A stretch of 63,208 nt of DNA, the filler included, from Octopus bimaculoides (lineage: Eukaryota): assembly GCF_001194135.2 (NCBI RefSeq). It is 4 parts of 4 records of this genome, joined end to end, with 100 filler letters (N's around TTAATTAATTAA, not from the genome) between each part and the next. Parts side by side here need not be neighbours in the genome. Positions count along the whole stretch, not along the records: positions 6,310 to 36,563 come from NC_068985.1; 3 more parts are not named here. One strand, written 5' to 3'. The notes below the pieces were generated by a model. The model searched no databases and was not told where the DNA came from. It was given only the letters and a program-made list of their open reading frames with translations. This document shows positions 6,310 through 34,865 of the stretch, one piece after another. How positions within the stretch are numbered: the stretch's first letter is position 1; the number at the start of each line of letters is the position of its first letter. Both the position numbers and the translations under genes were made by a program.

Positions 6310-7020
6310 GATAGGACATCATTTACGAGACACCCATTCAGGCAGCTAAGAAGAATATTTGCCAGAACCTTGCCAGCAGCTGAAAGTAGAGCAATACCTC
6401 TGTAGTTATCACACATTGTCCTGGCTCCTTTACCTTTATAGAGAAGAATAACTGCATTCACCCAGTCCTTAGGCATTGCACCATCTCTCCAGACAGTACT
6501 AATAAGTTCAAAGAGGGACTGTATGATGTAATCACTAACAAATCGCAAGACCTCAGTCCAAATTTCATCTTTTCCAAGTGCCCTACCAAGATTCAATTTA
6601 CTTATTGATGTCATTACTTCATCTATTGAGGGCGTGGAATTTAAGGTGACAATGATAGGTCTTTGTTGCATAGCATCAATCACTGTTTCATCTACAACTG
6701 ACTCATGGTTTAAGAGTTCAGAGAAGTGTTCAATCCAGCGACCTGTGATTTCTGTTGATTTAGTAAATAGAGTGGAAAACTCCTTGGAAAGCAAAGGAGT
6801 TGATGGGGAGCTCTTAGGCCTATAAACTTGCTTCATAAGATGGTAAAGCTTCTTGTTGTCATTTGCGTCAGCAGCAGCCTGAACATCACGAGAAAGATCC
6901 TCCCACCAAGTGTTCTGCATCTTCCTGAGAGATCGCTGCAGTAGTGATTTTACACTGCTATAGAGGGCAAGTGCTAGATTTCGCTGCACAGCTGAAAATC
7001 CTCTGTGCAGCAATACATTG
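6310..7020 (-). mobile_element. RTE-clade LINE fragment (linker plus RT N-terminal region)
   Basis: Translation includes MQNTWWEDLSRDVQAAAD, RWIEHFSELLN, PKDWVNAVILLYKGKG..CDNYRGIALLSAAGKVLANIL. The ORF stop lies in the artificial gap linker. Confidence 0.9.
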
Positions 7021-9400: not shown

Positions 9401-10055
9401 CCCAAGGCTCCTTCATTGGAGTTTCAAAATCAACAGAGATATTTTCTCGAAGCTTGGAGCAACTTCATCTACGGAAATCCTAATTCTTCAGCAGAAATTC
9501 TTTGAAACTTCTCCCAATAGACCATAGAATCCAACNNNNNNNNNNNNNNNNNNNNNNNNNNNNNNNNNNNNNNNNNNNNNNNNNNNNNNNNNNNNNNNNN
9601 NNNNNNNNNNNNNNNNNNNNNNNNNNNNNNNNNNNNNNNNNNNNNNNNNNNNNNNNNNNNNNNNNNNNNNNNNNNNNNNNNNNNNNNNNNNNNNNNNNNN
9701 NNNNNNNNNNNNNNNNNNNNNNNNNNNNNNNNNNNNNNNNNNNNNNNNNNNNNNNNNNNNNNNNNNNNNNNNNNNNNNNNNNNNNNNNNNNNNNNNNNNN
9801 NNNNNNNNNNNNNNNNNNNNNNNNNNNNNNNNNNNNNNNNNNNNNNNNNNNNNNNNNNNNNNNNNNNNNNNNNNNNNNNNNNNNNNNNNNNNNNNNNNNN
9901 NNNNNNNNNNNNNNNNNNNNNNNNNNNNNNNNNNNNNNNNNNNNNNNNNNNNNNNNNNNNNNNNNNNNNNNNNNNNNNNNNNNNNNNNNNNNNNNNNNNN
10001 NNNNNNNNNNNNNNNNNNNNNNNNNNNNNNNNNNNNNNNNNNNNNNNNNNNNNNN

Positions 10056-10276
10056 GTCTGTGTGTATATGTGTTTGTGTGTCTGTATTTGTTCCTCCGCC
10101 ATCGCTTGGCAACAGATGTTGGTGTGTTTACGTCCCCGTAACTTAGTGGTTCTGCAAAAGAGCCCCATAGAATAAGTACTAGGTTTACAAAGAATAAGTC
10201 CTGGGGTAGATTCATTCGACTAAAGGCGGTGCTCCAGCATGGCCGCGCTCGAATGACTGAAACCAATAAAAGAATA
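10056..10276 (+). mobile_element. SINE family C, tail half
   Basis: gtgtttacgtccccgtaacttag...gactaaaggcggtgctccagcatggcc...tgactgaaac. Confidence 0.85.
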
Positions 10277-11574: not shown

Positions 11575-12030
11575 TTTTCTATCTTTCATTTGTTTCAGTG
11601 ATTTGGCTGCGGCCATGTTGGGCCACCACCTTGAATAATTTTTGGTCGAAAGAATCGGCCCTAGTACTTATCTCTTGTAAAGCCTGGTACTTATTCTATC
11701 GGTTTCTGTTTTTTGTCGAACCGCTAAGTTACGAAGGCGCAAACACACCAAGACGGGTTTTCAACCGTTGGTGGGGGTCAGAGACACAAATGCGACCCCC
11801 CACGCACACACACACACACACACACCCAACACACACATATACAAACACACAAACACACACACAAACACATACGACGAGTTTCTTTCAGTTTCCGTCTATC
11901 AAATTTGCTTACAAGCTTTGGTCGGCCTGAAGTTATAGTACAAAGCACTTGCCCAAAGTTCCACAGAGTGGAACTGAACCCGGGACCATGTGGTTAGGAA
12001 GCAAGCTTCTTACCACACAGCCACACCTAG
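11575..12030 (-). mobile_element. SINE family C, full length with internal (CA)n
   Basis: Head and tail both match the other copies. Confidence 0.85.
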
Positions 12031-13563: not shown

Positions 13564-16363
13564 TTCCGTTTTCAGTTGTATAATTCCCAACATAACAAAC
13601 TTTCAAGCAGTTTATCAACACGTCCAAAAGCAAAAGAGCATTCCTTAACGAATTCATCATACGGTTCGAAACGGTTCATATGGCTTGTTACTTCGTCTGT
13701 TGGCTGAATAATTGCTGCTGCTGGTCGGAGTGTTCTAGTTTCCTTGAACAGAATATAACACGAGCGGTGCTTAAACAGTCGCTACGTAGTCATGGCCGGC
13801 CTCATGAAAAGCTTTAAATTTATCAATATTAATCGGTACCCAATTCTTTCTAAACAACAAAACCACTTCTCGGTTCCCATAACTGAGTATACTTTCAAAT
13901 CCGCTCCATTTGCGATATATATTTGCGAATACCATAGTGAAAGTAGCGGAACAATCACACAGGTCGTCTTATATCACGGCTGTCATTTTAGGTTTTTCAC
14001 TTCACATGAAATCTATTGAGAATCATGGTTAGACCTACACCGTCTTACCCAGACTGTTGCAAATAGAGTCGCTAGAAGATTTGACACCGCATTGAATCGA
14101 AAAGCACATATTCATTCTTATCCGTCAAAAATCAAAACCGTGCTTTTTATAGCAAACGGCCACTCGAATGATTTTTCGCTCAGTTGTGTTTCTTGTTACA
14201 GAAATTCGCATTTTCTATGCTAACACGTCAAATATGAATTTCTTAACTCTCCTAACATTCTTACTAGCTATTCTTTAGGATATTGTTGTCTATTGTGCTA
14301 CGCCCTTACTAAACTTAATCAATCATTCCCTTTAAGGAAAATGTACTGCTGTTTGTTGACCACCTCACTCAACTCCCGTCCAACTCATGAATACGAGTAG
14401 TTTAATCTTGCAGTGTGAGTATGAGACAATCAGCTTCTCGTAATCAAGTCTATTTCTTTGTATACTGTAGTTTACAAAATTGTAGTCAGTGTATCCTACC
14501 GTCCGATAATATTGACAAATGATGTTGTTCGTATACTCTGACCCCGCAAAATGCTTTCTTTGTCGATGCGATTTGGATGATTCGATATTTTTCTTCTTAG
14601 TTAATATTAGCATATTCAAGAAATCCAAGTGGTACTTATCAATTCGACAGTTGGAAATGCTTGACAGTTTATGAGTGTTGTCATTAATGTTGTCGTGCTT
14701 GTTGTTGCTGATATTCTCGTTTCTATAGCATTTGCAGTTGCTGTGTAATCCCAGATTGAGAAGGTCAAAGACCAAAGCCTTTCAGCTATAGCCACTCTTT
14801 CTTGTTAACAAGAGAATTTGAGCTTTTTTAAAACTCGCAGTACTGCTTACAAAACATGTGGGCAATACATTCTTCCCGTTCTCTTTCGGAACTCGCTGTC
14901 CCACGTAGGTGGCAAGAGTATGAACTTATCATTCCAACACAGAGTAATTGAGTAAAATTTGTATCCGCATCCAAGTATATTTAAAATGTCGCCGGAATAT
15001 TTCAAACCCAGATGATAAATAATTTAATGGTGAAATCCCATCGAAATAGCCATCTTTTAATTTGTATTCGCATGCATGTATATTTAAAATGTTTCCGGAA
15101 TATTTTAAACCCAGATGATAAATAATTTGATGATCAAATCCAGTCGGAATATCCATCATGTAATAGTGATGGTAATTGTTTTTATGATTCACAATTTTAT
15201 TTGTTTCTGCATAAATGTTTACCGATTATTTATGAAATATTTGATGTATCTCGTACATGCGTTTAGAACTACCTTACATGTGGATAATATTTCAAAATCA
15301 ACAATAGTGGAACATTTTATTGTTATAGTTAAACCATAATACACATCTACTTTGGAAGTAGTAGTGTCAAATGATTGATGAACGGTAGATAGTTCATGTT
15401 GATAGACAAGAATAGATAGTTTATGTAATTTGCGAAACATTATTACACTCAAAATATTTGAGTACTAACAAGGTGAATATGCAATGAAGATATTATATGT
15501 CTCAAGAACATTATTGCTAACCTAACTACTTTAGAAGGAAATCAGAAAGCAATAGTAGCTGTAACACTCTATTCGATTACCATACTAGGGTAACTGATTT
15601 ACCACTATTACTGATATCCAATGTTCCTTTTCTTAATAGAACAATAACTCTTGAGATATATTCATGAAAATCGCGTGGTTATCAACAGCCAGCAACTTAT
15701 ATAGTAATAAATTATAGTTGTATTATTTTGCAATATAAAATAAGAGAACGCACAATATTTCACTCATTATTTTTATTAGCAAAAGAAAAAAGAATACAAT
15801 GCAAAGTTTGTCATTTATCTCATAAATTTGATCAGACAGAGTNNNNNNNNNNNNNNNNNNNNNNNNNNNNNNNNNNNNNNNNNNNNNNNNNNNNNNNNNN
15901 NNNNNNNNNNNNNNNNNNNNNNNNNNNNNNNNNNNNNNNNNNNNNNNNNNNNNNNNATATATATATATATATATATAATTGTTAACATTTACTACTGATG
16001 AAAAATATAAATTAAAAAAACCGCCTACATATGGCATTATAGAAGAGGAAAAGTAATATCGTGACGGTTTTCTTACCCGAAAACATCAAACAATAAAATA
16101 AGAATAAAAAGTCATGAGGAATATGTTTTAAATTCCGTTATCAAAGTGCACTATTAGTATATAGATAAAACAAATGCAAGTATGTAGTAATATTGTAAAA
16201 TATAATCACAATTAAAGTTAGCTGTGTAATTATTAGTTAATTTCTGATCAGTTCTCACAATATACTTTCAATGAAAACATTTCATTTTTAATTACCAAGA
16301 ACAAAAAGAAAAGAAATCGAAATAGTCAGTGGGGTATATCCTTACATCACCCAATTTTGTACT

Positions 16364-17804
16364 CTAAGTTAAACGATTAATCGCTAAATCTTTTGTTGAA
16401 AGTCTGTCAACTTTTCCGTTCCCTAGTTTAGGAAACCTATCAAACTGTATAATACAGTCAGGGGTGGATGTTACATAATCGAAGTAACTTGGCTGAGGCA
16501 TATGCTCATTGCAGAACTTAAGGATTGACTTCTCATCAAATTTTTTCCCAGTTTTCATAATGACACAAGCACAAACTTTTAATTCATGTTCTTCATCCGG
16601 GATAGGAACAACTACAACACAATCAACATCTGGGTGACGCTGTACATGCTGCTCAACAAATTTAGTTGATATTTTTCTAGCTGACTTCTGAATGAAGTCA
16701 ACGTCTCTGCCAAGCATAATTATTTCCTTATTCTCAGTCATTTTACAAATGTCTCTTGTCTTAAACCATCCATTATCTAGAACTGATTTTCCATCAGCTG
16801 AAACCTTCGTACACCACCTACTTCGTGCACATAAATAACCTTCTTTTCCGATATCGACAATATCGTTATGGTCATCAACAATTTTCGCTTCCACATTAGG
16901 TAGTAGTGGACCTATGAGTCCCGGAAAATATTCCCCAATATTATTCTTACTGAATCTCTTCACTGCAATCATTAGGGTTTCGGCAGTTGAAAGAAAGTTG
17001 TCAATAGTTTTTGTCCAAGATAAACCTTGTTTCATAGCATCATAGGTAGGTATATCACCAGCTAACATAACTAAATCTAAAATCGGTTTATCTCCTGTAC
17101 ATAAACGTAAATCAGCTGGAATCATAGATGAAATATTACAGCTCTCCTTCGTTAAGAGATTCTTAAGTTTCTGGAAATCCTTTGGGCAGTTTAAGCTACA
17201 CATATCTGCAGAGACATATTTGCACCCAGTTGCTATAAATGAGAGAGGATATGATCCACCAAAGCCCATATAACGTTCATTAAAAACTACATCATTCGAT
17301 GTTATACCAGCTCCATCACAATAACACTCTGCACAGTTGATGACATCAAAGCTGCTATGAGTAACTCGCTTAGGTTTCCCTGTTGACCCAGATGTTTGCA
17401 CAATGATTGTAACATCTTCGGGTTCCATGTGGGGAAAGTTAAATGTTTGGCAGTTGGTTGAACGTAGAGACTTTATTTCAGAAACGTTTATAGCTAAACG
17501 CAGTTTTGGAAAAGTTTCACTGACCACATTACCGTTTTCGAAAATATCTGCTACCTTAAGTAATTTATTGTAAAAGGCTGGATCTGAATCAAAAACAGCT
17601 GCCACACAATCTTCTAGCATGGGTAAGAAATCCGCTTGTCCTGCCCAGAGTCTCACCGAACATCCTCCAGCCATCATAATGCCGCTGTCATATGCCATCC
17701 ACTCAACACAGTTCGATACACAGAGGGCAATTCGATCACCTTTCTTGATTCCTTTTCCCACAAGAAACTTTGCAAACACTTCAGTACTTTCGTAGAGTTC
17801 TCTC
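16364..17804 (-). CDS. Coding exon 2 of an ANL-superfamily AMP-dependent synthetase/ligase (acyl-CoA synthetase/ACSF2-like or luciferase-like)
   Basis: Uninterrupted 1441-nt frame. Motifs: P-loop QTSGSTGKPK, GWFKTRD (A7 Asp), LGRDVDFI (A8), FPKLGNGKVDR (A10 Lys). The acceptor tttcttttaag|G (AG at 17806-17805) is in frame with the supplied ORF 16364..17779 and adds RELYESTE. Confidence 0.93.
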
Positions 17805-18698
17805 CTTAAAAGAAAGTAATAAAGGAAATGCAGATAATACCTCGGTAAGTTGAATGCATGTTACAAATATATTTAAGTGCTTGAGGATTACGCTACATAC
17901 ATACAACATATATATNNNNNNNNNNNNNNNNNNNNNNNNNNNNNNNNNNNNNNNNNNNNNNNNNNNNNNNNNNNNNNNNNNNNNNNNNNNNNNNNNNNNN
18001 NNNNNNNNNNNNNNNNNNNNNNNNNNNNNNNNNNNNNNNNNNNNNNNNNNNNNNNNNNNNNNNNNNNNNNNNNNNNNNNNNNNNNNNNNNNNNNNNNNNN
18101 NNNNNNNNNNNNNNNNNNNNNNNNNNNNNNNNNNNNNNNNNNNNNNNNNNNNNNNNNNNNNNNNNNNNNNNNNNNNNNNNNNNNNNNNNNNNNNNNNNNN
18201 NNNNNNNNNNNNNNNNNNNNNNNNNNNNNNNNNNNNNNNNNNNNNNNNNNNNNNNNNNNNNNNNNNNNNNNNNNNNNNNNNNNNNNNNNNNNNNNNNNNN
18301 NNNNNNNNNNNNNNNNNNNNNNNNNNNNNNNNNNNNNNNNNNNNNNNNNNNNNNNNNNNNNNNNNNNNNNNNNNNNNNNNNNNNNNNNNNNNNNNNNNNN
18401 NNNNNNNNNNNNNNNNNNNNNNNNNNNNNNNNNNNNNNNNNNNNNNNNNNNNNNNNNNNNNNNNNNNNNNNNNNNNNNNNNNNNNNNNNNNNNNNNNNNN
18501 NNNNNNNNNNNNNNNNNNNNNNNNNNNNNNNNTATATATATATGTATGTATGTATGTATATGTATATGTATGTATGTATGTATGCATGCATGTATGTATG
18601 TATGTATGTATGTATGTATGTATGTATTTATATATACCTCTGGCGAGTTAACGTGAGTCTCTTTTACGACAATATAACCTTCATATAATTAAGGCATC

Positions 18699-18785
18699 TC
18701 CGGCCTGACGAGTAGCTAGCGGAGTACTCCTCGAGTAATTATTATCTCTGAGGATCTGCTAGATAGGAAATTTACGAAGCCTGGA
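18699..18785 (+). ncRNA. Decayed type I hammerhead-like motif with a long stem II, antisense inside the ANL intron
   Basis: TCCGGC CTGACGA G TAGCTAGC...GCTAGATA G GAAA T-TTAC-G A A GCCTGGA. Spacing is exact; C11.1 and U16.1 are substituted. Confidence 0.5.
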
Positions 18786-18999
18786 TTTTACCTGCTCCAC
18801 TCCCTAGGCTGTTATATATATACATATATATTCTTTGGCGGTCAATCAATAAAATAAGAACAAGCTGAGCACTGCGGCCTACGTAATCGAGTTACACCCT
18901 CGCTTGATATTGCTGGCCTTGTACCAAAATTTGAAAGCAATATATACTGAATTAATTTCTCATGAATACATATTGAACCTGATGAAATAGGATACTTTT

Positions 19000-19194
19000 T
19001 ACTCTTTTACTTGTTTCAGTCATTTGACTGTGGCCATGCCGGAGCACCGCCTTTAGTCGAGCAAATCGACCCCAGGACTTATTCTTTGTAAGCCTAGTAC
19101 TTATTCTATCGGTCTCTTTTGCCGAGCCGCTAAGTTACGGGAACGTAAACACACCAGCATCGGTTGTCAAGCGATGTTGGGGGGACAAACACAG

Positions 19195-19246
<52 letters not shown>

Positions 19247-19432
19247 AAACACAAACACACATATATATATACATACATACGACGGGCTTCTTTCAGTTTC
19301 GTCTACCAAATCCACTCACAAGGCTTTGGTTGGCCCGAGGCTATAATAGAAGGCACTTGCCCAAGGTGCCACGCAGTGGGACTGAACCCGGAACCATGTG
19401 GTTGGTAAGCAAGCTGCTTATCACACAGCTAT
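19000..19432 (-). mobile_element. SINE family C, full length, in the ANL intron
   Basis: High similarity to the other family C copies, with an internal (CA)n tract. Confidence 0.88.
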
Positions 19433-19905
19433 GTAGTATCATATATACCACACAGTTCTATGTTGAAGTGCTCCGGTCCTTTATATTGCGTGATTTTCTT
19501 TTTTAGAAATATAGCTTAAGATCCGACGTACACATATCTGATAAACACTAAAAAAAAATCTTTGTTGGATTAAAATGTTAATAGGATATTGTGTTATTTG
19601 TAAGAAGAAAACATGCGCCAAAGTCTAATGTAATTTCATTATATAATTTCTCTCTTTCTATAAATAGATTCATATTGGATGGCATTCTATACTGAAATAT
19701 GGTTAATAAATCACTTTGCAAAATAAGGTTCTTTTTGACTGAATTAATCTTCTCTTTTTTGCAATACATCCAAAAGGGTGTTTGTAAATCGCTATTCTGT
19801 GGAAGGTGTCGCTGAGATACGAAAGGTTCTAAACCCCTGTGTTAAATCTTTCCAATAAGGAAAGTGGAAATATCTCAGAGAAAATATAAAATTGATAGTA
19901 CTTAC

Positions 19906-20051
19906 CTTGTTATCTGTGTTCGTTGCATTTTGTTGTCATAATAAGCAAATGCCACTTTTTCCGGATCTTCAAGCGCAAAACGAAACAATCTTTTTGGAAT
20001 AGTTTCGTAACTTAGCTGACGAATACTTGATGCGTGAGAATAACTCTTCAT
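19906..20051 (-). CDS. Coding exon 1 of the same ANL enzyme (MKSYSHASSIRQLSYETIPKRLFRFALEDPEKVAFAYYDNKMQRTQIT)
   Basis: ATG at 20051 with an in-frame TAA 15 nt upstream. The exon is 146 nt (48 codons + AG) and ends at donor AAG|gtaagt. Phase 2 matches exon 2 (AG+G = Arg). The peptide resembles the SYxH...TI...L...P.K.A N-terminus of ACSF2-like enzymes. Confidence 0.88.
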
Positions 20052-21832: not shown

Positions 21833-22713
21833 NNNNNNNNNNNNNNNNNNNNNNNNNNNNNNNNNNNNNNNNNNNNNNNNNNNNNNNNNNNNNNNNNNNN
21901 NNNNNNNNNNNNNNNNNNNNNNNNNNNNNNNNNNNNNNNNNNNNNNNNNNNNNNNNNNNNNNNNNNNNNNNNNNNNNNNNNNNNNNNNNNNNNNNNNNNN
22001 NNNNNNNNNNNNNNNNNNNNNNNNNNNNNNNNNNNNNNNNNNNNNNNNNNNNNNNNNNNNNNNNNNNNNNNNNNNNNNNNNNNNNNNNNNNNNNNNNNNN
22101 NNNNNNNNNNNNNNNNNNNNNNNNNNNNNNNNNNNNNNNNNNNNNNNNNNNNNNNNNNNNNNNNNNNNNNNNNNNNNNNNNNNNNNNNNNNNNNNNNNNN
22201 NNNNNNNNNNNNNNNNNNNNNNNNNNNNNNNNNNNNNNNNNNNNNNNNNNNNNNNNNNNNNNNNNNNNNNNNNNNNNNNNNNNNNNNNNNNNNNNNNNNN
22301 NNNNNNNNNNNNNNNNNNNNNNNNNNNNNNNNNNNNNNNNNNNNNNNNNNNNNNNNNNNNNNNNNNNNNNNNNNNNNNNNNNNNNNNNNNNNNNNNNNNN
22401 NNNNNNNNNNNNNNNNNNNNNNNNNNNNNNNNNNNNNNNNNNNNNNNNNNNNNNNNNNNNNNNNNNNNNNNNNNNNNNNNNNNNNNNNNNNNNNNNNNNN
22501 NNNNNNNNNNNNNNNNNNNNNNNNNNNNNNNNNNNNNNNNNNNNNNNNNNNNNNNNNNNNNNNNNNNNNNNNNNNNNNNNNNNNNNNNNNNNNNNNNNNN
22601 NNNNNNNNNNNNNNAGAAATAGATCACATCTTGTGTCTATTAAGACCTAAATTGTTCTCAACATGAAATATAGTAGCATTAATTTTCCACGTTAGTGGTC
22701 GACGTTATTTAAA

Positions 22714-24107: not shown

Positions 24108-25089
24108 NNNNNNNNNNNNNNNNNNNNNNNNNNNNNNNNNNNNNNNNNNNNNNNNNNNNNNNNNNNNNNNNNNNNNNNNNNNNNNNNNNNNNNNNNNNNN
24201 NNNNNNNNNNNNNNNNNNNNNNNNNNNNNNNNNNNNNNNNNNNNNNNNNNNNNNNNNNNNNNNNNNNNNNNNNNNNNNNNNNNNNNNNNNNNNNNNNNNN
24301 NNNNNNNNNNNNNNNNNNNNNNNNNNNNNNNNNNNNNNNNNNNNNNNNNNNNNNNNNNNNNNNNNNNNNNNNNNNNNNNNNNNNNNNNNNNNNNNNNNNN
24401 NNNNNNNNNNNNNNNNNNNNNNNNNNNNNNNNNNNNNNNNNNNNNNNNNNNNNNNNNNNNNNNNNNNNNNNNNNNNNNNNNNNNNNNNNNNNNNNNNNNN
24501 NNNNNNNNNNNNNNNNNNNNNNNNNNNNNNNNNNNNNNNNNNNNNNNNNNNNNNNNNNNNNNNNNNNNNNNNNNNNNNNNNNNNNNNNNNNNNNNNNNNN
24601 NNNNNNNNNNNNNNNNNNNNNNNNNNNNNNNNNNNNNNNNNNNNNNNNNNNNNNNNNNNNNNNNNNNNNNNNNNNNNNNNNNNNNNNNNNNNNNNNNNNN
24701 NNNNNNNNNNNNNNNNNNNNNNNNNNNNNNNNNNNNNNNNNNNNNCATATATACGTACAGGTATGTGCATACCGACATCCACCTGTATGTATAGGTGCAT
24801 ATCTGGGTACAGGACATTGCAAACAAACGTAGACGAGAACACACGAGCCACATAGAGAACATTCTACTTCATCAGCTACCCACGTTTTAACACCGGCGTT
24901 TCGACGAGCTTGGGCAGGACGCATCGTTAAAACGGCTCGTCCCATGGATCGCAGATTAAATTTGTATACGCAAATTAAATCTAGCCATGGAGGAATGTAG
25001 TGGCGGACAAAAAACAAGACAGGAAAACAAACAGAAAAGGCTTTACGGCCAGACGAGAAAAATAATGTGTGTATGAACGCGATGAGGCA

Positions 25090-26097: not shown

Positions 26098-26761
26098 TGT
26101 ATCTATATATAGTAAAGTGAGTCCCCACATCTAAGTGGCAGTAGAATGCTACTACTAGTTTAACCGTAGGCAGATTCTCCGCTTTGATGTGGCCACATGC
26201 TTTACTGTTTAGTATATACATTAATACTCTATCTCTTCTTGGGATTTTATAATTAGCTATTTTGCGTATATATATATATATATATANNNNNNNNNNNNNN
26301 NNNNNNNNNNNNNNNNNNNNNNNNNNNNNNNNNNNNNNNNNNNNNNNNNNNNNNNNNNNNNNNNNNNNNNNNNNNNNNNNNNNNNNNNNNNNNNNNNNNN
26401 NNNNNNNNNNNNNNNNNNNNNNNNNNNNNNNNNNNNNNNNNNNNNNNNNNNNNNNNNNNNNNNNNNNNNNNNNNNNNNNNNNNNNNNNNNNNNNNNNNNN
26501 NNNNNNNNNNNNNNNNNNNNNNNNNNNNNNNNNNNNNNNNNNNNNNNNNNNNNNNNNNNNNNNNNNNNNNNNNNNNNNNNNNNNNNNNNNNNNNNNNNNN
26601 NNNNNNNNNNNNNNNNNNNNNNNNNNNNNNNNNNNNNNNNNNNNNNNNNNNNNNNNNNNNNNNNNNNNNNNNNNNNNNNNNNNNNNNNNNNNNNNNNNNN
26701 NNNNNNNNNNNNNNNNNNNNNNNNNNNNNNNNNNNNNNNNNNNNNNNNNNNNNNNNNNNNN

Positions 26762-28160: not shown

Positions 28161-28723
28161 TANNNNNNNNNNNNNNNNNNNNNNNNNNNNNNNNNNNNNN
28201 NNNNNNNNNNNNNNNNNNNNNNNNNNNNNNNNNNNNNNNNNNNNNNNNNNNNNNNNNNNNNNNNNNNNNNNNNNNNNNNNNNNNNNNNNNNNNNNNNNNN
28301 NNNNNNNNNNNNNNNNNNNNNNNNNNNNNNNNNNNNNNNNNNNNNNNNNNNNNNNNNNNNNNNNNNNNNNNNNNNNNNNNNNNNNNNNNNNNNNNNNNNN
28401 NNNNNNNNNNNNNNNNNNNNNNNNNNNNNNNNNNNNNNNNNNNNNNNNNNNNNNNNNNNNNNNNNNNNNNNNNNNNNNNNNNNNNNNNNNNNNNNNNNNN
28501 NNNNNNNNNNNNNNNNNNNNNNNNNNNNNNNNNNNNNNNNNNNNNNNNNNNNNNNNNNNNNNNNNNNNNNNNNNNNNNNNNNNNNNNNNNNNNNNNNNNN
28601 NNNNNNNNNNNNNNNNNNNNNNNNNNNNNNNNNNNNNNNNNNNNNNNNNNNNNNNNNNNNNNNNNNNNNNNNNNNNNNNNNNNNNNNNNNNNNNNNNNNN
28701 NNNTATGTTTATATGAAAAAAAG

Positions 28724-31671: not shown

Positions 31672-32483
31672 NNNNNNNNNNNNNNNNNNNNNNNNNNNNN
31701 NNNNNNNNNNNNNNNNNNNNNNNNNNNNNNNNNNNNNNNNNNNNNNNNNNNNNNNNNNNNNNNNNNNNNNNNNNNNNNNNNNNNNNNNNNNNNNNNNNNN
31801 NNNNNNNNNNNNNNNNNNNNNNNNNNNNNNNNNTATATATATATATATATATATGACAAAAAAGGAAAAGAAAATTAATTGGCATTGCAAAAAATTTACA
31901 ACAGAATTGACAACATGTTAGGAATTTCATAAACAATAGAAGCAACACAAGAAAGAACGAGAACTTACTATCAAGGAATGATTGGAGCACAGTGCGATTC
32001 AGATCACATTCTTATCGGAGCACCCATTGCATTTGCGCAACTAAACCTACCTCTTCCAGATTCAGAGTTTATTAGCATGTTCGATATTGGCCAAACCTTT
32101 AACTCCGAAATATTCTGTGAAGAGTGTGTGATTAAACCAGTTATCATTTCGTAGCTTGAAGCTTTCGTCTACAATCAACTTTGAATCGAGCACGGTAATT
32201 ATCCACTTTCAGCTTTTCCAGCAATTCTACTAGAAATTATTTTTCCTTCGAGGAACCATGGACTTCAACCAGGGTAAGCAGACAGGTGCATTTCTGTACG
32301 TCCTGTTTGTGTTTTTAGTATTCATATCTTTAGTCTGTGTCCATTTTGTATACAACTGTTCTTATTGTTTCTGTTTTCGGTAGATTTCCCCACTATCGCA
32401 AAGCGATGAATTGAAGCTACTGCTGCTGGAAGCCCTCAGCCTATTCATTCCTGGTGGCGTAGATTTTGCTTCGATTTCTCACA

Positions 32484-33909: not shown

Positions 33910-34865
33910 TTGCATAGAATGTTGAGCGATGGCTTGGAAACAGTATGGCGAAGTGGAGAATGGAACTGACAGCATATGAAACAAGTTTAGGGACAATAGA
34001 AACCTGGACAGGCATCTTCCAAGGGGAGTACCTGTTCCCACTGATCTTTGTACTGTGCTTGATACCACTAACACTGATTCTGAGGAAAGCAAAGGCTGGG
34101 TATGTATTCAAGAGCCGCCATCAAAAAGTCAACCACTTGTTATTCATGAATGACTTCAAACTTTGTGATAAAAAGGAATCCCAAGTCATTTTCCTCGTTG
34201 ATACGGTGTATACTTTCAGTGTTGATGTCAGAATGGAATTCGGACTGAAAAAATGTGGTGTGTTACTCTTGAAGAGACTATGTATGGACGGGCTAGCGAT
34301 ACCGTCGGGGAAAGTTATGAAGTAGATAGAAGAGGCGGGTTATAAGTACTTGAGGATATTGGTAATTAGTGGATAAATTGATGGAGAAAGAAATGACAGG
34401 AAAATTTAAGGTGTAGTACTTGCGCAGATTGAGACTGATCCTCAAGTTGAAATTAAACGACGGAATAAGATTGAAGCTATCAACATCTGGGCGGCTTCAC
34501 TCTTTAGATATGGACCAGGGGTAATCACATTGACAACAGACGAACTAAGCAGCTTAGACAGAAAGACAAGGAAGTTGCTGACTAGATATGGGATACTCCA
34601 CCCAAAACGTGACACAGACAGACTATATGTACCAAGAAAAAGATGGGGAAGAGGACTGATTGGATGCGAACACAGCATTAGGGCAGAAGAAAACAACATA
34701 TCGTGGTATGTAAAAAATGCCACAGAACCACTATTATTGGAAGTAAGAAGTCAGGTTTGAGCAGGATCGAAGATTGCAAAGATAAAGCACTGTACAAGCA
34801 CTTGAAAATGAATGAAACTGAAAATAGGTGGATGAAGAAAAGAATGTATGGACAATTTGCTGGGA
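33910..34865 (+). mobile_element. Decayed R4/Dong-clade non-LTR retrotransposon RT region
   Basis: GIFQGEYLFPLIFVLCLIPL...VNHLLFMNDFKL...MEFGLKKCG, then LDRKTRKLLTRYGILHPKRDTDRLYVPRKRWGRGLI, with stops and frameshifts. Confidence 0.88.

What the first reader, a model, noticed from the sequence alone, without database searches (positions are those of the whole stretch)
16364..20051. Divergent, nearly intronless ANL-superfamily enzyme: candidate member of the cephalopod luciferase-like clade
Seen: an intact 528-aa gene with a single coding intron and a 1441-nt exon. The ATP-binding residues are kept (TSGSTGKPK, A7 Asp, A8 Arg/Asp, A10 Lys). The substrate pocket is unusual: FNERYMGFGGSYP replaces the PLFHxxG region, LSTAET replaces YGxTE, and TRD replaces TGD. 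There is no mitochondrial presequence and no PTS1-like end (NRLT). Known: vertebrate ACSF2/ACSL genes have many exons, and the firefly squid photophore proteins wsluc1-3 are ANL-superfamily members. Inference: this gene belongs to a mollusc/cephalopod-expanded ANL clade of retrocopy or ancient horizontal origin that adenylates a non-standard acid, and may be related to the squid luciferase-like proteins.
Basis: partly seen in the sequence, partly recalled or inferred. Interest (0 to 1): 0.7.

Follow-up and report, generated by a model that had tools for sequence, protein, structure and literature searches.

The report
Octopus paralog of squid luciferase-like enzymes
This is an intact, already annotated two-exon Octopus bimaculoides gene for a fast-evolving ATP-using (adenylate-forming) enzyme on the same cephalopod-only branch as the candidate luciferases of the firefly squid; its substrate and its role in a non-luminous octopus are unknown.

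Summary
On the minus strand, exon 1 (20051-19906, 146 nt) and exon 2 (17804-16364, 1441 nt) splice at consensus sites into a 528-aa ORF. The N gap lies inside the intron. In the gap-free O. vulgaris ortholog its two flanks abut, so no exon is hidden there. The spliced product is identical to RefSeq XP_014780454.1 ("putative acyl-CoA synthetase YngI", Octopus bimaculoides).

It is an ANL-superfamily enzyme (Pfam AMP-binding plus AMP-binding_C; AlphaFold pLDDT 90.9). It is 32-37% identical to Watasenia wsluc1-4 and sits with them in a cephalopod clade with 100% bootstrap, inside a tandemly duplicated, so far octopus-only subclade.

Relatives in chiton, unionid mussel, brachiopod and hemichordate have no introns at all, and all animal members group together apart from bacteria. 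So the intron-poor state and the odd A4 pocket motif are inherited from an old invertebrate family. Cephalopods gained one intron after codon 49. Transfer from bacteria into cephalopods is rejected.

The P-loop, A5 Glu, A7 Asp, A8 Arg and A10 Lys are kept. The A5 Tyr-Gly, the A7 Gly, the A8 hinge and the A8 Gly are not. Adenylation is therefore likely, and CoA ligation is uncertain. Modest novelty.

The parts
19906..20051 (-). Coding exon 1: 146 nt, codons 1-48 plus 2 nt of codon 49, phase-2 end. Encodes MKSYSH...QIT(R).
   Evidence: Translation and GT donor scan. The same 146-nt first exon occurs in O. vulgaris P0001 and P0005 and in O. bimaculoides P0003. The N-terminus MKSY/MASY/MSSY is conserved in wsluc2-4 and in the octopus paralogs.
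17805..19905 (-). The single intron, about 2.1 kb with the gap length only estimated. Donor GTAAGT, acceptor TTTCTTTTAAG.
   Evidence: The intron position (after codon 49) is shared with octopus subclade B (L003) and with Argonauta (L009).
17916..18532 (.). Assembly gap (N) inside the intron, flanked by TA/TATG microsatellite.
   Evidence: Its flanks are adjacent in the gap-free O. vulgaris locus L001 (12103 and 12111), so no exon is hidden.
18993..19431 (.). SINE-like interspersed repeat with a (CA)n tail, inserted in the intron. It is absent at this spot in O. vulgaris.
   Evidence: blastn gives multiple dispersed copies, in the window at 10056-10276 and 11582-12029 and in L001. Inverted pair I22. 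No tRNA or Rfam hit.
16364..17804 (-). Coding exon 2: 1441 nt, codons 49-528 plus the TAG stop.
   Evidence: Pfam AMP-binding covers aa 24-381 and AMP-binding_C covers aa 432-496.
17369..17395 (-). A3 P-loop TSGSTGKPK (aa 186-194). Intact.
   Evidence: T186 and G188 are invariant, and S187, T190, G191, P193 and K194 are at least 90% conserved, in the 89-sequence alignment.
17246..17287 (-). A4 / acyl-pocket region VFNERYMGFGGSYP (aa 222-235), in place of the canonical PLFHxxG.
   Evidence: The pattern N/S-D/x-R-P/Y-M/F-x-W/Y/F-x-G-G-Y/F-P is shared with wsluc1/3, octopus subclade B, chiton, bivalves, Lingula and sea anemones.
16979..16993 (-). A5 LSTAE (aa 320-324) in place of YGxTE. Glu324 is kept. 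The aromatic residue and the Gly are lost in subclade A only.
   Evidence: Among 73 non-cephalopod rows, position 320 is Y/W/F in 67, position 321 is G in 70, and position 323 is T in 68.
16751..16759 (-). A7 TRD (aa 398-400) in place of TGD. Asp400 is invariant and the Gly is replaced.
   Evidence: The Gly is lost in all cephalopod members (R/S/D/T) and in the sister bivalve group (D/N), but kept in chiton, Mya, Lingula, cnidarians and bacteria.
16685..16711 (-). A8 GRDVDFIQK (aa 414-422). Arg415 is kept, the hinge position (Arg+2) is Val instead of D/K, and the downstream Gly-Gly is replaced by Ser-Ala.
16403..16432 (-). A10 PKLGNGKVDR (aa 507-516), carrying the catalytic Lys513.
16287..16292 (-). 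Candidate poly(A) signal ATTAAA, 71 nt after the stop codon.
   Evidence: This is a sequence match only, with no transcript evidence.

Best explanation
The locus is the Octopus bimaculoides gene for XP_014780454.1. It encodes a 528-aa, probably cytosolic, two-domain ANL-superfamily (adenylate-forming) enzyme.

Placement. It belongs to a cephalopod-specific clade that also contains the Watasenia scintillans photophore crystal proteins wsluc1-4. Within that clade it sits in a tandemly duplicated, fast-evolving subclade ('A') so far seen only in Octopus. The cephalopod clade descends vertically from an old, ancestrally intronless invertebrate 'ACSF2-like' family. That family had already replaced the canonical A4 pocket motif and the A8 glycine. 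Cephalopods later gained one intron after codon 49 and lost the A7 glycine.

Mechanism (inferred). The enzyme binds Mg-ATP through the intact P-loop, Glu324, Asp400 and Arg415. It uses Lys513 to adenylate an unidentified substrate, probably a hydrophobic or aromatic carboxylate, held in the remodelled A4 pocket.

Whether the acyl-AMP is then passed to CoA is uncertain, at roughly even odds. The A8 hinge and glycines that serve the thioester-forming conformation are replaced.

Shown: gene structure, identity with the RefSeq model, fold, clade membership, motif states, and purifying but relaxed selection. Inferred: catalytic competence, cellular location, type of substrate.
For: - Gene model and gap. 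Exact match to XP_014780454.1.
- ANL family and fold: Pfam AMP-binding 109 bits (cut-off 29.9) and AMP-binding_C 29 bits (cut-off 24.5). AlphaFold2 gives pLDDT 90.9 and pTM 0.86. Foldseek gives TM 0.77-0.80 to MatB-ATP, firefly luciferase in the adenylate-forming conformation and human ACSM2A.
- Link to wsluc: BLASTP to wsluc2 gives 33% identity over 546 aa at E 2e-89. To wsluc4 it gives 32% at 6e-90, to wsluc3 (first 400 aa) 35%, and to wsluc1 37%. My transcription of the supplement sequences was checked against AXM90650.1. The profile search ranks Watasenia luciferase-like protein 4 third at 524 bits, and the next single-domain hits are molluscs.
- NJ trees: cephalopod clade 100%, subclade A 100%, cephalopods plus a bivalve group 98%, animals against bacteria 100%.
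- Gimenez et al. 2016 (PMC4899746) had already found O. bimaculoides proteins to be the only hits above 30% identity to wsluc.
- Gene structures.
- Catalytic residues: with their roles taken from PMC8388817 Table 2 and PMC3438747.
- Constraint: dN/dS is 0.48 (dS 0.11) against the O. vulgaris ortholog, with no indel or stop in 528 codons. A paralog pair gives 0.38.
Against:
- The A7 Gly is described as almost completely conserved in the superfamily, and Gly-to-Ala cut acetyl-CoA synthetase turnover more than 200-fold (PMC3438747). Here it is Arg.
- The A5 aromatic residue and Gly, which position ATP, are lost in subclade A. A dN/dS near 0.5 is high for a housekeeping enzyme. Together these leave room for a weak or non-catalytic protein.
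- The trees are simple NJ trees on alignments of about 25-40% identity.
- Squid and cuttlefish proteomes are nearly absent from the databases searched, so 'octopus-only subclade' may be a sampling effect.
- wsluc1-4 are themselves only candidate luciferases.
Confidence: 0.8

Rival explanations
1. It is an ordinary medium-chain fatty acyl-CoA synthetase, functionally equivalent to ACSF2 (or bacterial YngI/FadD), that has merely drifted in sequence.
For: - Database names for family members are 'ACSF2-like', 'YngI' and 'oxalate--CoA ligase-like'.
- The best NCBIfam models are fatty-acid CoA ligase subfamilies PRK06187 and PRK12583.
- Human ACSF2 is the closest characterised protein to wsluc, at 24-26% identity (PMC4899746).
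- The adenylation residues are kept.
Against: - Scores are 142 and 131 bits against cut-offs of 476 and 832.
- There is no N-terminal presequence.
- Each octopus genome carries several paralogs in two subclades rather than a one-to-one ortholog.
- The A4 His/aromatic motif, the A7 Gly, the A8 hinge and the A8 Gly are all changed.
- No vertebrate ACSF2 appeared among the best 120 hits of the chiton relative.
Confidence: 0.12
2. It is a catalytically dead or very weak 'pseudoenzyme' kept for a structural, binding or storage role. The homologs wsluc1-3 make up photophore crystals.
For: - A5 has lost its aromatic residue and its Gly, and A7 has Arg in place of the near-universal Gly.
- Gly-to-Ala at that A7 site reduces turnover more than 200-fold in Acs.
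- dN/dS is 0.48.
- wsluc1-3 are the protein constituents of the photophore microcrystals (PMC4899746).
Against: - The P-loop, Glu324, Asp400, Arg415 and Lys513 are all retained across subclade A and between species. That would not be expected without selection on nucleotide chemistry.
- The A5 consensus tolerates Ala before the Glu (PMC8388817 Table 2).
- The model folds as a complete ANL enzyme.
Confidence: 0.15
3. It is a retrocopy made in cephalopods, or a gene acquired by cephalopods from bacteria.
For: - Apart from one intron the gene is a single long exon.
- The first word-indexed search showed a drop from 38% identity (octopods) to 27% (metagenomic and bacterial proteins).
Against: - The exhaustive profile search finds molluscan relatives next.
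- Animals are monophyletic against bacteria at 100%, and cephalopods join a bivalve group at 98%, with a shared loss of the A7 Gly.
- Intronless homologs exist in chiton, unionid mussel, brachiopod and hemichordate. The intron-poor state therefore predates cephalopods.
Confidence: 0.03
4. It is an ATP-dependent oxygenase of the luciferase type, acting on a coelenterazine-like imidazopyrazinone.
For: - It shares a clade with wsluc1-4.
- The A8 region, which serves the second half-reaction, is remodelled in the whole clade.
Against: - Octopus bimaculoides is not known to be luminous (general knowledge).
- In my trees wsluc groups with octopus subclade B rather than with this subclade, though weakly (55-67%).
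- I found no paper reporting recombinant luciferase activity for wsluc itself.
Confidence: 0.05

Closest known systems
Watasenia scintillans wsluc1-4 (photophore crystal proteins / 'luciferase-like proteins'; Gimenez et al. 2016, PMC4899746; AXM90650.1)
   Same: - Same cephalopod-specific ANL clade (100% bootstrap), with 32-37% identity over the full length.
- Shared MKSYxH...ETIPER N-terminus.
- Shared A4 signature NxRxMxYxGGYP (wsluc1/3).
- A7 without Gly, a remodelled A8, an extended A9 loop, and the A10 Lys kept.

   Different: - This gene lies in a separate, Octopus-only subclade. wsluc groups, weakly, with octopus subclade B.
- Its A5 is LSTAE, against Y(A/S)S(T/N/V)E in wsluc.
- It lacks the 105-aa N-terminal extension of wsluc1.
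- It has an 11-residue deletion near aa 163.
- The host is not luminous, and no crystal or photophore context is known.
[quoted passage not shown]
   Same: - It is the closest experimentally characterised relative of the clade (24-26% identity to wsluc, per PMC4899746).
- Database names for many family members derive from it.
- Same two-domain ANL fold.
   Different: - No presequence here.
- One intron here, against many in vertebrate ACSF2 (general knowledge).
- Multiple lineage-specific paralogs.
- The A4, A7 and A8 motifs are altered.
- It is not retrieved as an ortholog.
Firefly luciferase (Photinus pyralis; PDB 4G36, 6Q2M)
   Same: Same superfamily and fold (TM 0.79), and the predicted model resembles the adenylate-forming conformation. 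The analogy is an ANL enzyme recruited for light production.
   Different: Only 16-17% identity. It is no closer than MatB, MenE or ACSM2A. Any luciferase function in cephalopods would be independent.
Invertebrate intronless 'ACSF2-like' family (e.g. Liolophura XP_064601866.1, Sinanodonta KAL3846671.1, Lingula LOC106152043, Ptychodera ACSF2-like)
   Same: - This is the parent family.
- It shares the A4 'DRP..W/Y..GG' motif and the Gly-less A8.
- Its genes are single-exon or nearly so.
   Different: - 23-29% identity.
- Those outside the sister bivalve group keep YGxTE and TGD.
- They lack the cephalopod intron and the longer A9 insertion.

Membership tests
ANL superfamily (acyl-CoA synthetase / NRPS adenylation / luciferase) | AMP-binding N-domain plus AMP-binding_C domain above the Pfam thresholds | tested here: met
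   PF00501 scores 109.4 bits (cut-off 29.9) and PF13193 scores 29 bits (cut-off 24.5).
ANL superfamily (acyl-CoA synthetase / NRPS adenylation / luciferase) | Two-domain ANL fold | tested here: met
   The AF2 model has pLDDT 90.9. Foldseek against PDB gives E about 1e-37 and TM 0.77-0.80 to several ANL enzymes.
ANL superfamily (acyl-CoA synthetase / NRPS adenylation / luciferase) | Core catalytic residues: A3 P-loop, A5 Glu, A7 Asp, A8 Arg, A10 Lys | tested here: met
   TSGSTGKPK, E324, D400, R415 and K513 all sit in invariant or at least 90% conserved columns.
ANL superfamily (acyl-CoA synthetase / NRPS adenylation / luciferase) | Full consensus of A5 (aromatic-G-x-A/T-E), A7 (S/T-G-D) and A8 (R-x-D/K-x6-G) | tested here: not met
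   The gene has LSTAE, TRD and GRDVDFIQKSA. The aromatic residue and Gly of A5, the Gly of A7, and the hinge D/K and Gly of A8 are all replaced. Consensus taken from PMC8388817.
Cephalopod wsluc-containing ANL clade | Groups with wsluc1-4 to the exclusion of all other ANL proteins | tested here: met
   100% bootstrap in two NJ trees. E is 1e-89 to wsluc2/4, against 1e-29 for the best non-cephalopod hit. wsluc4 is the third-best hit of the octopod profile.
Cephalopod wsluc-containing ANL clade | Clade signature motifs (N-terminus MxSYxH..ETIPER, A4 NxRxMxYxGGYP, A7 lacking Gly, long A9 loop) | tested here: met
   Alignments.
Cephalopod wsluc-containing ANL clade | Shared intron after codon 49 (phase 2) | tested here: inconclusive
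   Present in octopus subclades A and B and in Argonauta. No genomic locus for a wsluc gene was available.
Luciferase (functional sense) of the Watasenia type | ATP- and O2-dependent light emission with coelenterazine disulfate; photophore expression; crystal formation | not testable with these tools
   There are no expression or activity data. wsluc1-4 themselves are candidates identified by mass spectrometry (PMC4899746).
ACSF2 orthologs | One-to-one orthology with vertebrate ACSF2 | tested here: not met
   There are at least 3-4 subclade-A and at least 2 subclade-B genes per octopus genome. No vertebrate ACSF2 appears among the top hits of the family.
ACSF2 orthologs | Mitochondrial presequence | tested here: not met
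   The protein starts at the first strand of the fold (residues 4-7, pLDDT 91). There is no N-terminal extension relative to bacterial homologs. No dedicated targeting predictor was run.
Bacterial fatty-acid CoA ligase subfamilies (NCBIfam PRK06187, PRK12583; 'YngI') | Score above the curated cut-off | tested here: not met
   141.6 bits against 476, and 131.4 bits against 832.

The most novel reading that the evidence does not exclude
The Octopus-only subclade A, including this gene, may have left acyl-CoA synthesis altogether. On this reading it keeps ATP-dependent adenylation but carries out a different second step or acts on a different substrate class. That would make it a non-luminous sister of the lineage from which the firefly squid recruited its candidate luciferases. 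More broadly, the whole intronless invertebrate family with its altered A4 and A8 motifs would be a functionally distinct, uncharacterised branch of the ANL superfamily.
Probability: 0.25. Interest if true: 0.55.

Novelty: new member of a known kind. Interest (0 to 1): 0.3.

Why it matters
The firefly-squid light reaction is one of the few ATP-dependent bioluminescence systems outside beetles, and its enzyme has not been reconstituted. Non-luminous octopus relatives such as this gene show what the clade looked like before, or apart from, any recruitment for light. They also mark which motif changes are old and which are lineage-specific:
- family-wide: the A4 pocket and the A8 glycine;
- shared by cephalopods and one bivalve group: the A7 glycine;
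- specific to this octopus subclade: A5.

Such genes are also easy to express, being a two-exon gene with a soluble-looking protein, so they can be used to search for substrates.

The gene itself is already in RefSeq under a generic name, and the octopus-squid relationship of the family was published in 2016. The gain here is therefore refinement, not discovery.

Tried and rejected
The exact-sequence look-up answered the question instead.
- Biopython bootstrapping timed out. I replaced it with my own NJ and bootstrap script. No maximum-likelihood program was available.
- The word-indexed search with wsluc4 returned only 9 proteins. The distribution of the clade in squids and cuttlefish could therefore not be assessed.
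- Amphiura P0025 and Exaiptasia P0284 had no gene on record, so their intron states are unknown.
- The Gulick 2009 ANL review was not held. Motif roles were taken from PMC8388817 and PMC3438747 instead.
- PDB sequence searches, single and profile, found no close solved relative. The best hits were NRPS A-domains and oxalyl-CoA synthetase at E 1e-18 to 1e-44 summed.
- A tblastn of the protein against the rest of the window found no second ANL copy.
- The other long ORFs in the window gave nothing but one weak reverse-transcriptase hit.
- There were no tRNA or Rfam hits.
- The large 'repeats' are mostly artefacts of N runs.
- Literature searches for the octopus paralogs ('octopus' with 'YngI'; luciferase-like with octopus) found nothing beyond Gimenez 2016 and Yoshida 2020.


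Full report

The gene is on the minus strand.
- The ATG is the reverse complement of 20049-20051. It opens a 146-nt exon that ends at a consensus donor, AAG|GTAAGT (exon 1 = 20051..19906).
- A polypyrimidine acceptor, TTTCTTTTAAG|G, opens a 1441-nt exon that runs to a TAG (17804..16364).
- 146 + 1441 = 1587 nt, which is 528 codons plus a stop, with no internal stop.
- An in-frame stop lies five codons upstream of the ATG, and an ATTAAA lies 71 nt after the stop.

I tested the assembly gap (17916-18532) first, as the scan's note asked. It lies entirely inside the intron (17805-19905), 112 nt from the nearest exon edge. The orthologous locus of Octopus vulgaris (L001, OX597818.1) has no N. Against it, window 18557 aligns to L001 12111 and window 17915 aligns to L001 12103. 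The two flanks of the gap are therefore adjacent in the relative. The gap stands for an unresolved TA/TATG microsatellite, and no exon is hidden in it.

The O. vulgaris gene uses the same donor and acceptor, has the same 146-nt first exon, and has the same 528 codons. The exon junction reads ...QITR|RELYEST..., which is the A1 motif of the family. It is colinear in every homolog, including the cDNA-derived squid sequences.

Finally, the spliced product is letter for letter XP_014780454.1 / A0A0L8GJY5, 'putative acyl-CoA synthetase YngI [Octopus bimaculoides]'.

**2. What kind of protein is it?**

- Pfam gives AMP-binding (109 bits, cut-off 29.9) and AMP-binding_C (29 bits, cut-off 24.5).
- An AlphaFold2 model built on an 89-sequence alignment has mean pLDDT 90.9 and pTM 0.86.
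- Foldseek against the PDB returns only ANL enzymes, at E about 1e-37. TM scores of 0.77-0.80 go to ATP-bound MatB, firefly luciferase in the adenylate-forming conformation, and human ACSM2A, all at 16-20% identity.
- No solved structure is a close relative.
- NCBIfam's best models are fatty-acid CoA ligase subfamilies, far below their cut-offs (142 bits against 476; 131 against 832). Scores fall stepwise from hemichordate (335) to chiton (218) to octopus subclade B (175) to wsluc4 (160) to this gene (142).

This is a strongly diverged member of the fatty-acyl-CoA-ligase-like part of the superfamily.

**3. Relatives and the link to the squid proteins**

The first search found three tiers:
- the O. 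vulgaris ortholog, at 89% identity;
- a set of Octopus paralogs at 60-66% ('subclade A');
- a set from Octopus and Argonauta at 38-41% ('subclade B').

After that came a drop to 27% or less.

The supplement of Gimenez et al. 2016 (PMC4899746) holds the full sequences of wsluc2 and wsluc4 and the first 400 residues of wsluc1 and wsluc3. My transcription matches the database entries AXM90650.1 and its paralog. BLASTP of the window protein against them gave:

| Target | Identity | Length | E value |
|---|---|---|---|
| wsluc2 | 33% | 546 aa | 2e-89 |
| wsluc4 | 32% | 546 aa | 6e-90 |
| wsluc3 (first 400 aa) | 35% | 397 aa | 9e-75 |
| wsluc1 (first 400 aa) | 37% | 269 aa | 6e-55 |

The best non-cephalopod protein against wsluc scores only about 1e-29 to 1e-31.

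I then ran an exhaustive HMMER search of 1.84 billion representatives with a profile of the octopod proteins. It ranked 'luciferase-like protein 4 [Watasenia scintillans]' third, at 524 bits over the full length. The next single-domain hits (317-385 bits) are all molluscs: Tegillarca, Sinanodonta, Potamilus, Mya and the chiton Liolophura.

Two NJ trees with bootstrap gave:

| Grouping | Bootstrap |
|---|---|
| Cephalopod clade (subclade A + subclade B + wsluc) | 100% |
| Subclade A | 100% |
| Squid wsluc group | 100% |
| Subclade B | 79-89% |
| Subclade B + wsluc | 55-67% |
| Cephalopods + a bivalve group | 98% |
| All animal sequences against bacterial ones | 100% |

The general point is not new. 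Gimenez et al. reported that O. bimaculoides proteins were the only database hits above 30% identity to wsluc and that they grouped with them. They used other octopus accessions, however, and subclade A is not described in any paper I could find.

**4. Gene structure and origin**

The intron after codon 49 (phase 2, 146-nt first exon) is shared by six genes:
- this gene;
- its O. vulgaris ortholog;
- the O. vulgaris paralog P0005, which lies 66 kb away on the same chromosome, so the genes form a tandem cluster;
- O. bimaculoides P0003;
- the subclade B gene P0009;
- an Argonauta hians gene, whose 8.3-kb intron carries an LTR retroelement.

Outside cephalopods the homologs are single-exon genes:
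- chiton Liolophura (1662 nt for 553 codons);
- unionid mussel Sinanodonta;
- brachiopod Lingula;
- hemichordate Ptychodera.

Mya arenaria has one intron at a different place, near codon 385. The chiton protein's own nearest relatives are from brachiopods, sea anemones, a nemertean and octopus. Bacterial proteins follow at 26-29%.

So the intron-poor state is ancestral to a widespread invertebrate family, and cephalopods gained an intron. A cephalopod-level retrocopy or bacterial transfer is rejected. How the animal family as a whole became intronless (old retrogene, very old transfer, or intron loss) is not resolved here.

**5. Motifs, step by step** (roles from PMC8388817 Table 2 and PMC3438747)

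| Motif | State in this gene | How widely the change is shared |
|---|---|---|
| A3 P-loop | TSGSTGKPK, intact | No change |
| A4 | FNERYMGFGGSYP replaces the PLFHxxG block that carries the pocket aromatic/His | Shared with wsluc1/3 (N-G/S-R-H-M-A-Y-T-x-G-Y-P), octopus subclade B, chiton, bivalves, Lingula and sea anemones. A family trait, not a peculiarity of this gene. |
| A5 | LSTAE replaces YGxTE. Glu324 is invariant, and Ala before Glu lies within the published consensus. | The aromatic residue and the Gly are lost only in subclade A. |
| A7 | TRD. Asp400 is invariant. | The Gly is replaced in every cephalopod member (R, S, D or T) and in the sister bivalve group (D or N). This shared change agrees with the tree. 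|
| A8 | GRDVDFIQKSA. Arg415 and the Asp at Arg+3 are kept. The hinge position Arg+2 is Val (usually K or D), and the downstream Gly-Gly is Ser-Ala. | The Gly loss is family-wide. The hinge change is cephalopod-wide. |
| A10 | Lys513 kept | No change |

The A7 Gly is described as almost completely conserved in the superfamily, and Gly-to-Ala lowered acetyl-CoA synthetase turnover more than 200-fold.

One detail needs correcting: the canonical hinge residue of A8 is not kept.

**6. Is the gene under constraint?**

- Against the O. vulgaris ortholog, dS = 0.11, dN = 0.053 and dN/dS = 0.48. The two domains give similar values, and there is no indel or stop in 528 codons.
- The paralog pair P0003/P0005 gives 0.38.

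The gene is maintained, but it evolves fast for an enzyme.

**7. Most likely working**

Shown: the fold, the intact phosphate loop, the Mg/ribose/phosphate ligands and the catalytic lysine.

Inferred: the protein binds Mg-ATP and adenylates a substrate held in a pocket lined by the remodelled A4 segment. It is probably cytosolic. The chain begins in the first strand of the fold, has no extension, and ends in NRLT. No targeting predictor was run.

The second half-reaction is the weak point. The parts of A8 that serve the thioester-forming conformation are altered in the whole clade, so I put CoA ligation at about even odds.

Rivals, as scored in the report sections:
- an ordinary ACSF2-like fatty acyl-CoA synthetase (0.12);
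- a weak or dead pseudoenzyme with a structural or binding role (0.15);
- a luciferase-type oxygenase (0.05);
- a cephalopod-level retrocopy or transfer (0.03).

**8. Surroundings**

The 30-kb piece is colinear with the O. vulgaris chromosome at 85-93% identity. It contains no second ANL copy. The rest is SINE-like repeats, microsatellites, eight assembly gaps and fragments of retroelements. There are no tRNA or Rfam matches.

**9. Verdict**

- The gene is already annotated under a generic name, and the family's link to the squid proteins has been published.
- What this work adds: the placement of this particular subclade, the order in which the motifs changed, and the finding that the parent family is intronless across several invertebrate phyla, with a single intron gained in cephalopods.
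- Interest is modest.

Noticed in passing
L004 3001-4662; L006 2001-3701; L007 2001-3686; L008 1001-2683: The homologs in a chiton (Liolophura), a unionid mussel (Sinanodonta), a hemichordate (Ptychodera) and a brachiopod (Lingula) are all single-exon genes. An intronless ANL family spread over several invertebrate phyla, with its own A4 ('DRP..W/Y..GG') and Gly-less A8 motifs, does not seem to have been described.
   Followed up: partly
alignment columns at window aa 398-400 (window 16751-16759): Loss of the near-universal Gly of the A7 'TGD' motif is shared by all cephalopod members and by one bivalve group (Sinanodonta, Potamilus, Ruditapes). It is not shared by chiton, Mya, Lingula or cnidarians. 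This single-residue change agrees with the 98% NJ grouping of cephalopods with that bivalve group.
   Followed up: partly
window 18993-19431, 10056-10276, 11582-12029: Copies of a SINE-like repeat of about 440 nt with a (CA)n tail. The one in the intron is absent at the same spot in O. vulgaris, so it was inserted after the two species split or was lost in O. vulgaris. ARAGORN and Rfam do not recognise a tRNA-like head.
   Followed up: partly
window 9536-10055, 15843-15956, 17916-18532, 21833-22614, 24108-24745, 26287-26761, 28163-28703, 31672-31833: There are eight assembly gaps in 30 kb, several of them bordered by TA, TATG or CA microsatellites. The one tested collapses to about zero length in the gap-free O. 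vulgaris assembly, so its estimated length is too large, and the same may hold for the others.
   Followed up: partly
L001 (OX597818.1 98,810,885-98,814,538) and L002 (98,877,215-98,879,768): In O. vulgaris the ortholog and a 62%-identical paralog lie 66 kb apart in the same orientation on one chromosome. The O. bimaculoides paralogs have neighbouring accession numbers (XP_014780442, XP_014780446, XP_014780454). Together these indicate a tandem cluster of subclade A genes.
   Followed up: partly
L009 1150-9490 (Argonauta hians): The homologous intron in Argonauta is about 8.3 kb long. It carries, on the opposite strand, long ORFs that look like retroelement pol pieces (integrase-like and reverse-transcriptase/RNase H-like by eye; no domain search was run).
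   Followed up: no
window aa ~163 (about window 17460-17470): This gene and its O. vulgaris ortholog lack 11 residues that all other cephalopod members have, between ...EIKSL and RSTNC.... The model's confidence dips there (pLDDT about 70).
   Followed up: no
window 33945-34325 (+), 6310-7013 (-): Fragments of retroelement ORFs. The first gives a weak RVT_1 hit (E 9e-5, below the cut-off). The second looks like a LINE reverse transcriptase by eye but has no Pfam hit.
   Followed up: partly
whole protein: The protein has 21 cysteines in 528 residues. Several sit in positions conserved across the cephalopod clade (for example CVSNC, YLCxRSxWC, DIC, VCACV). Their significance is unknown.
   Followed up: no
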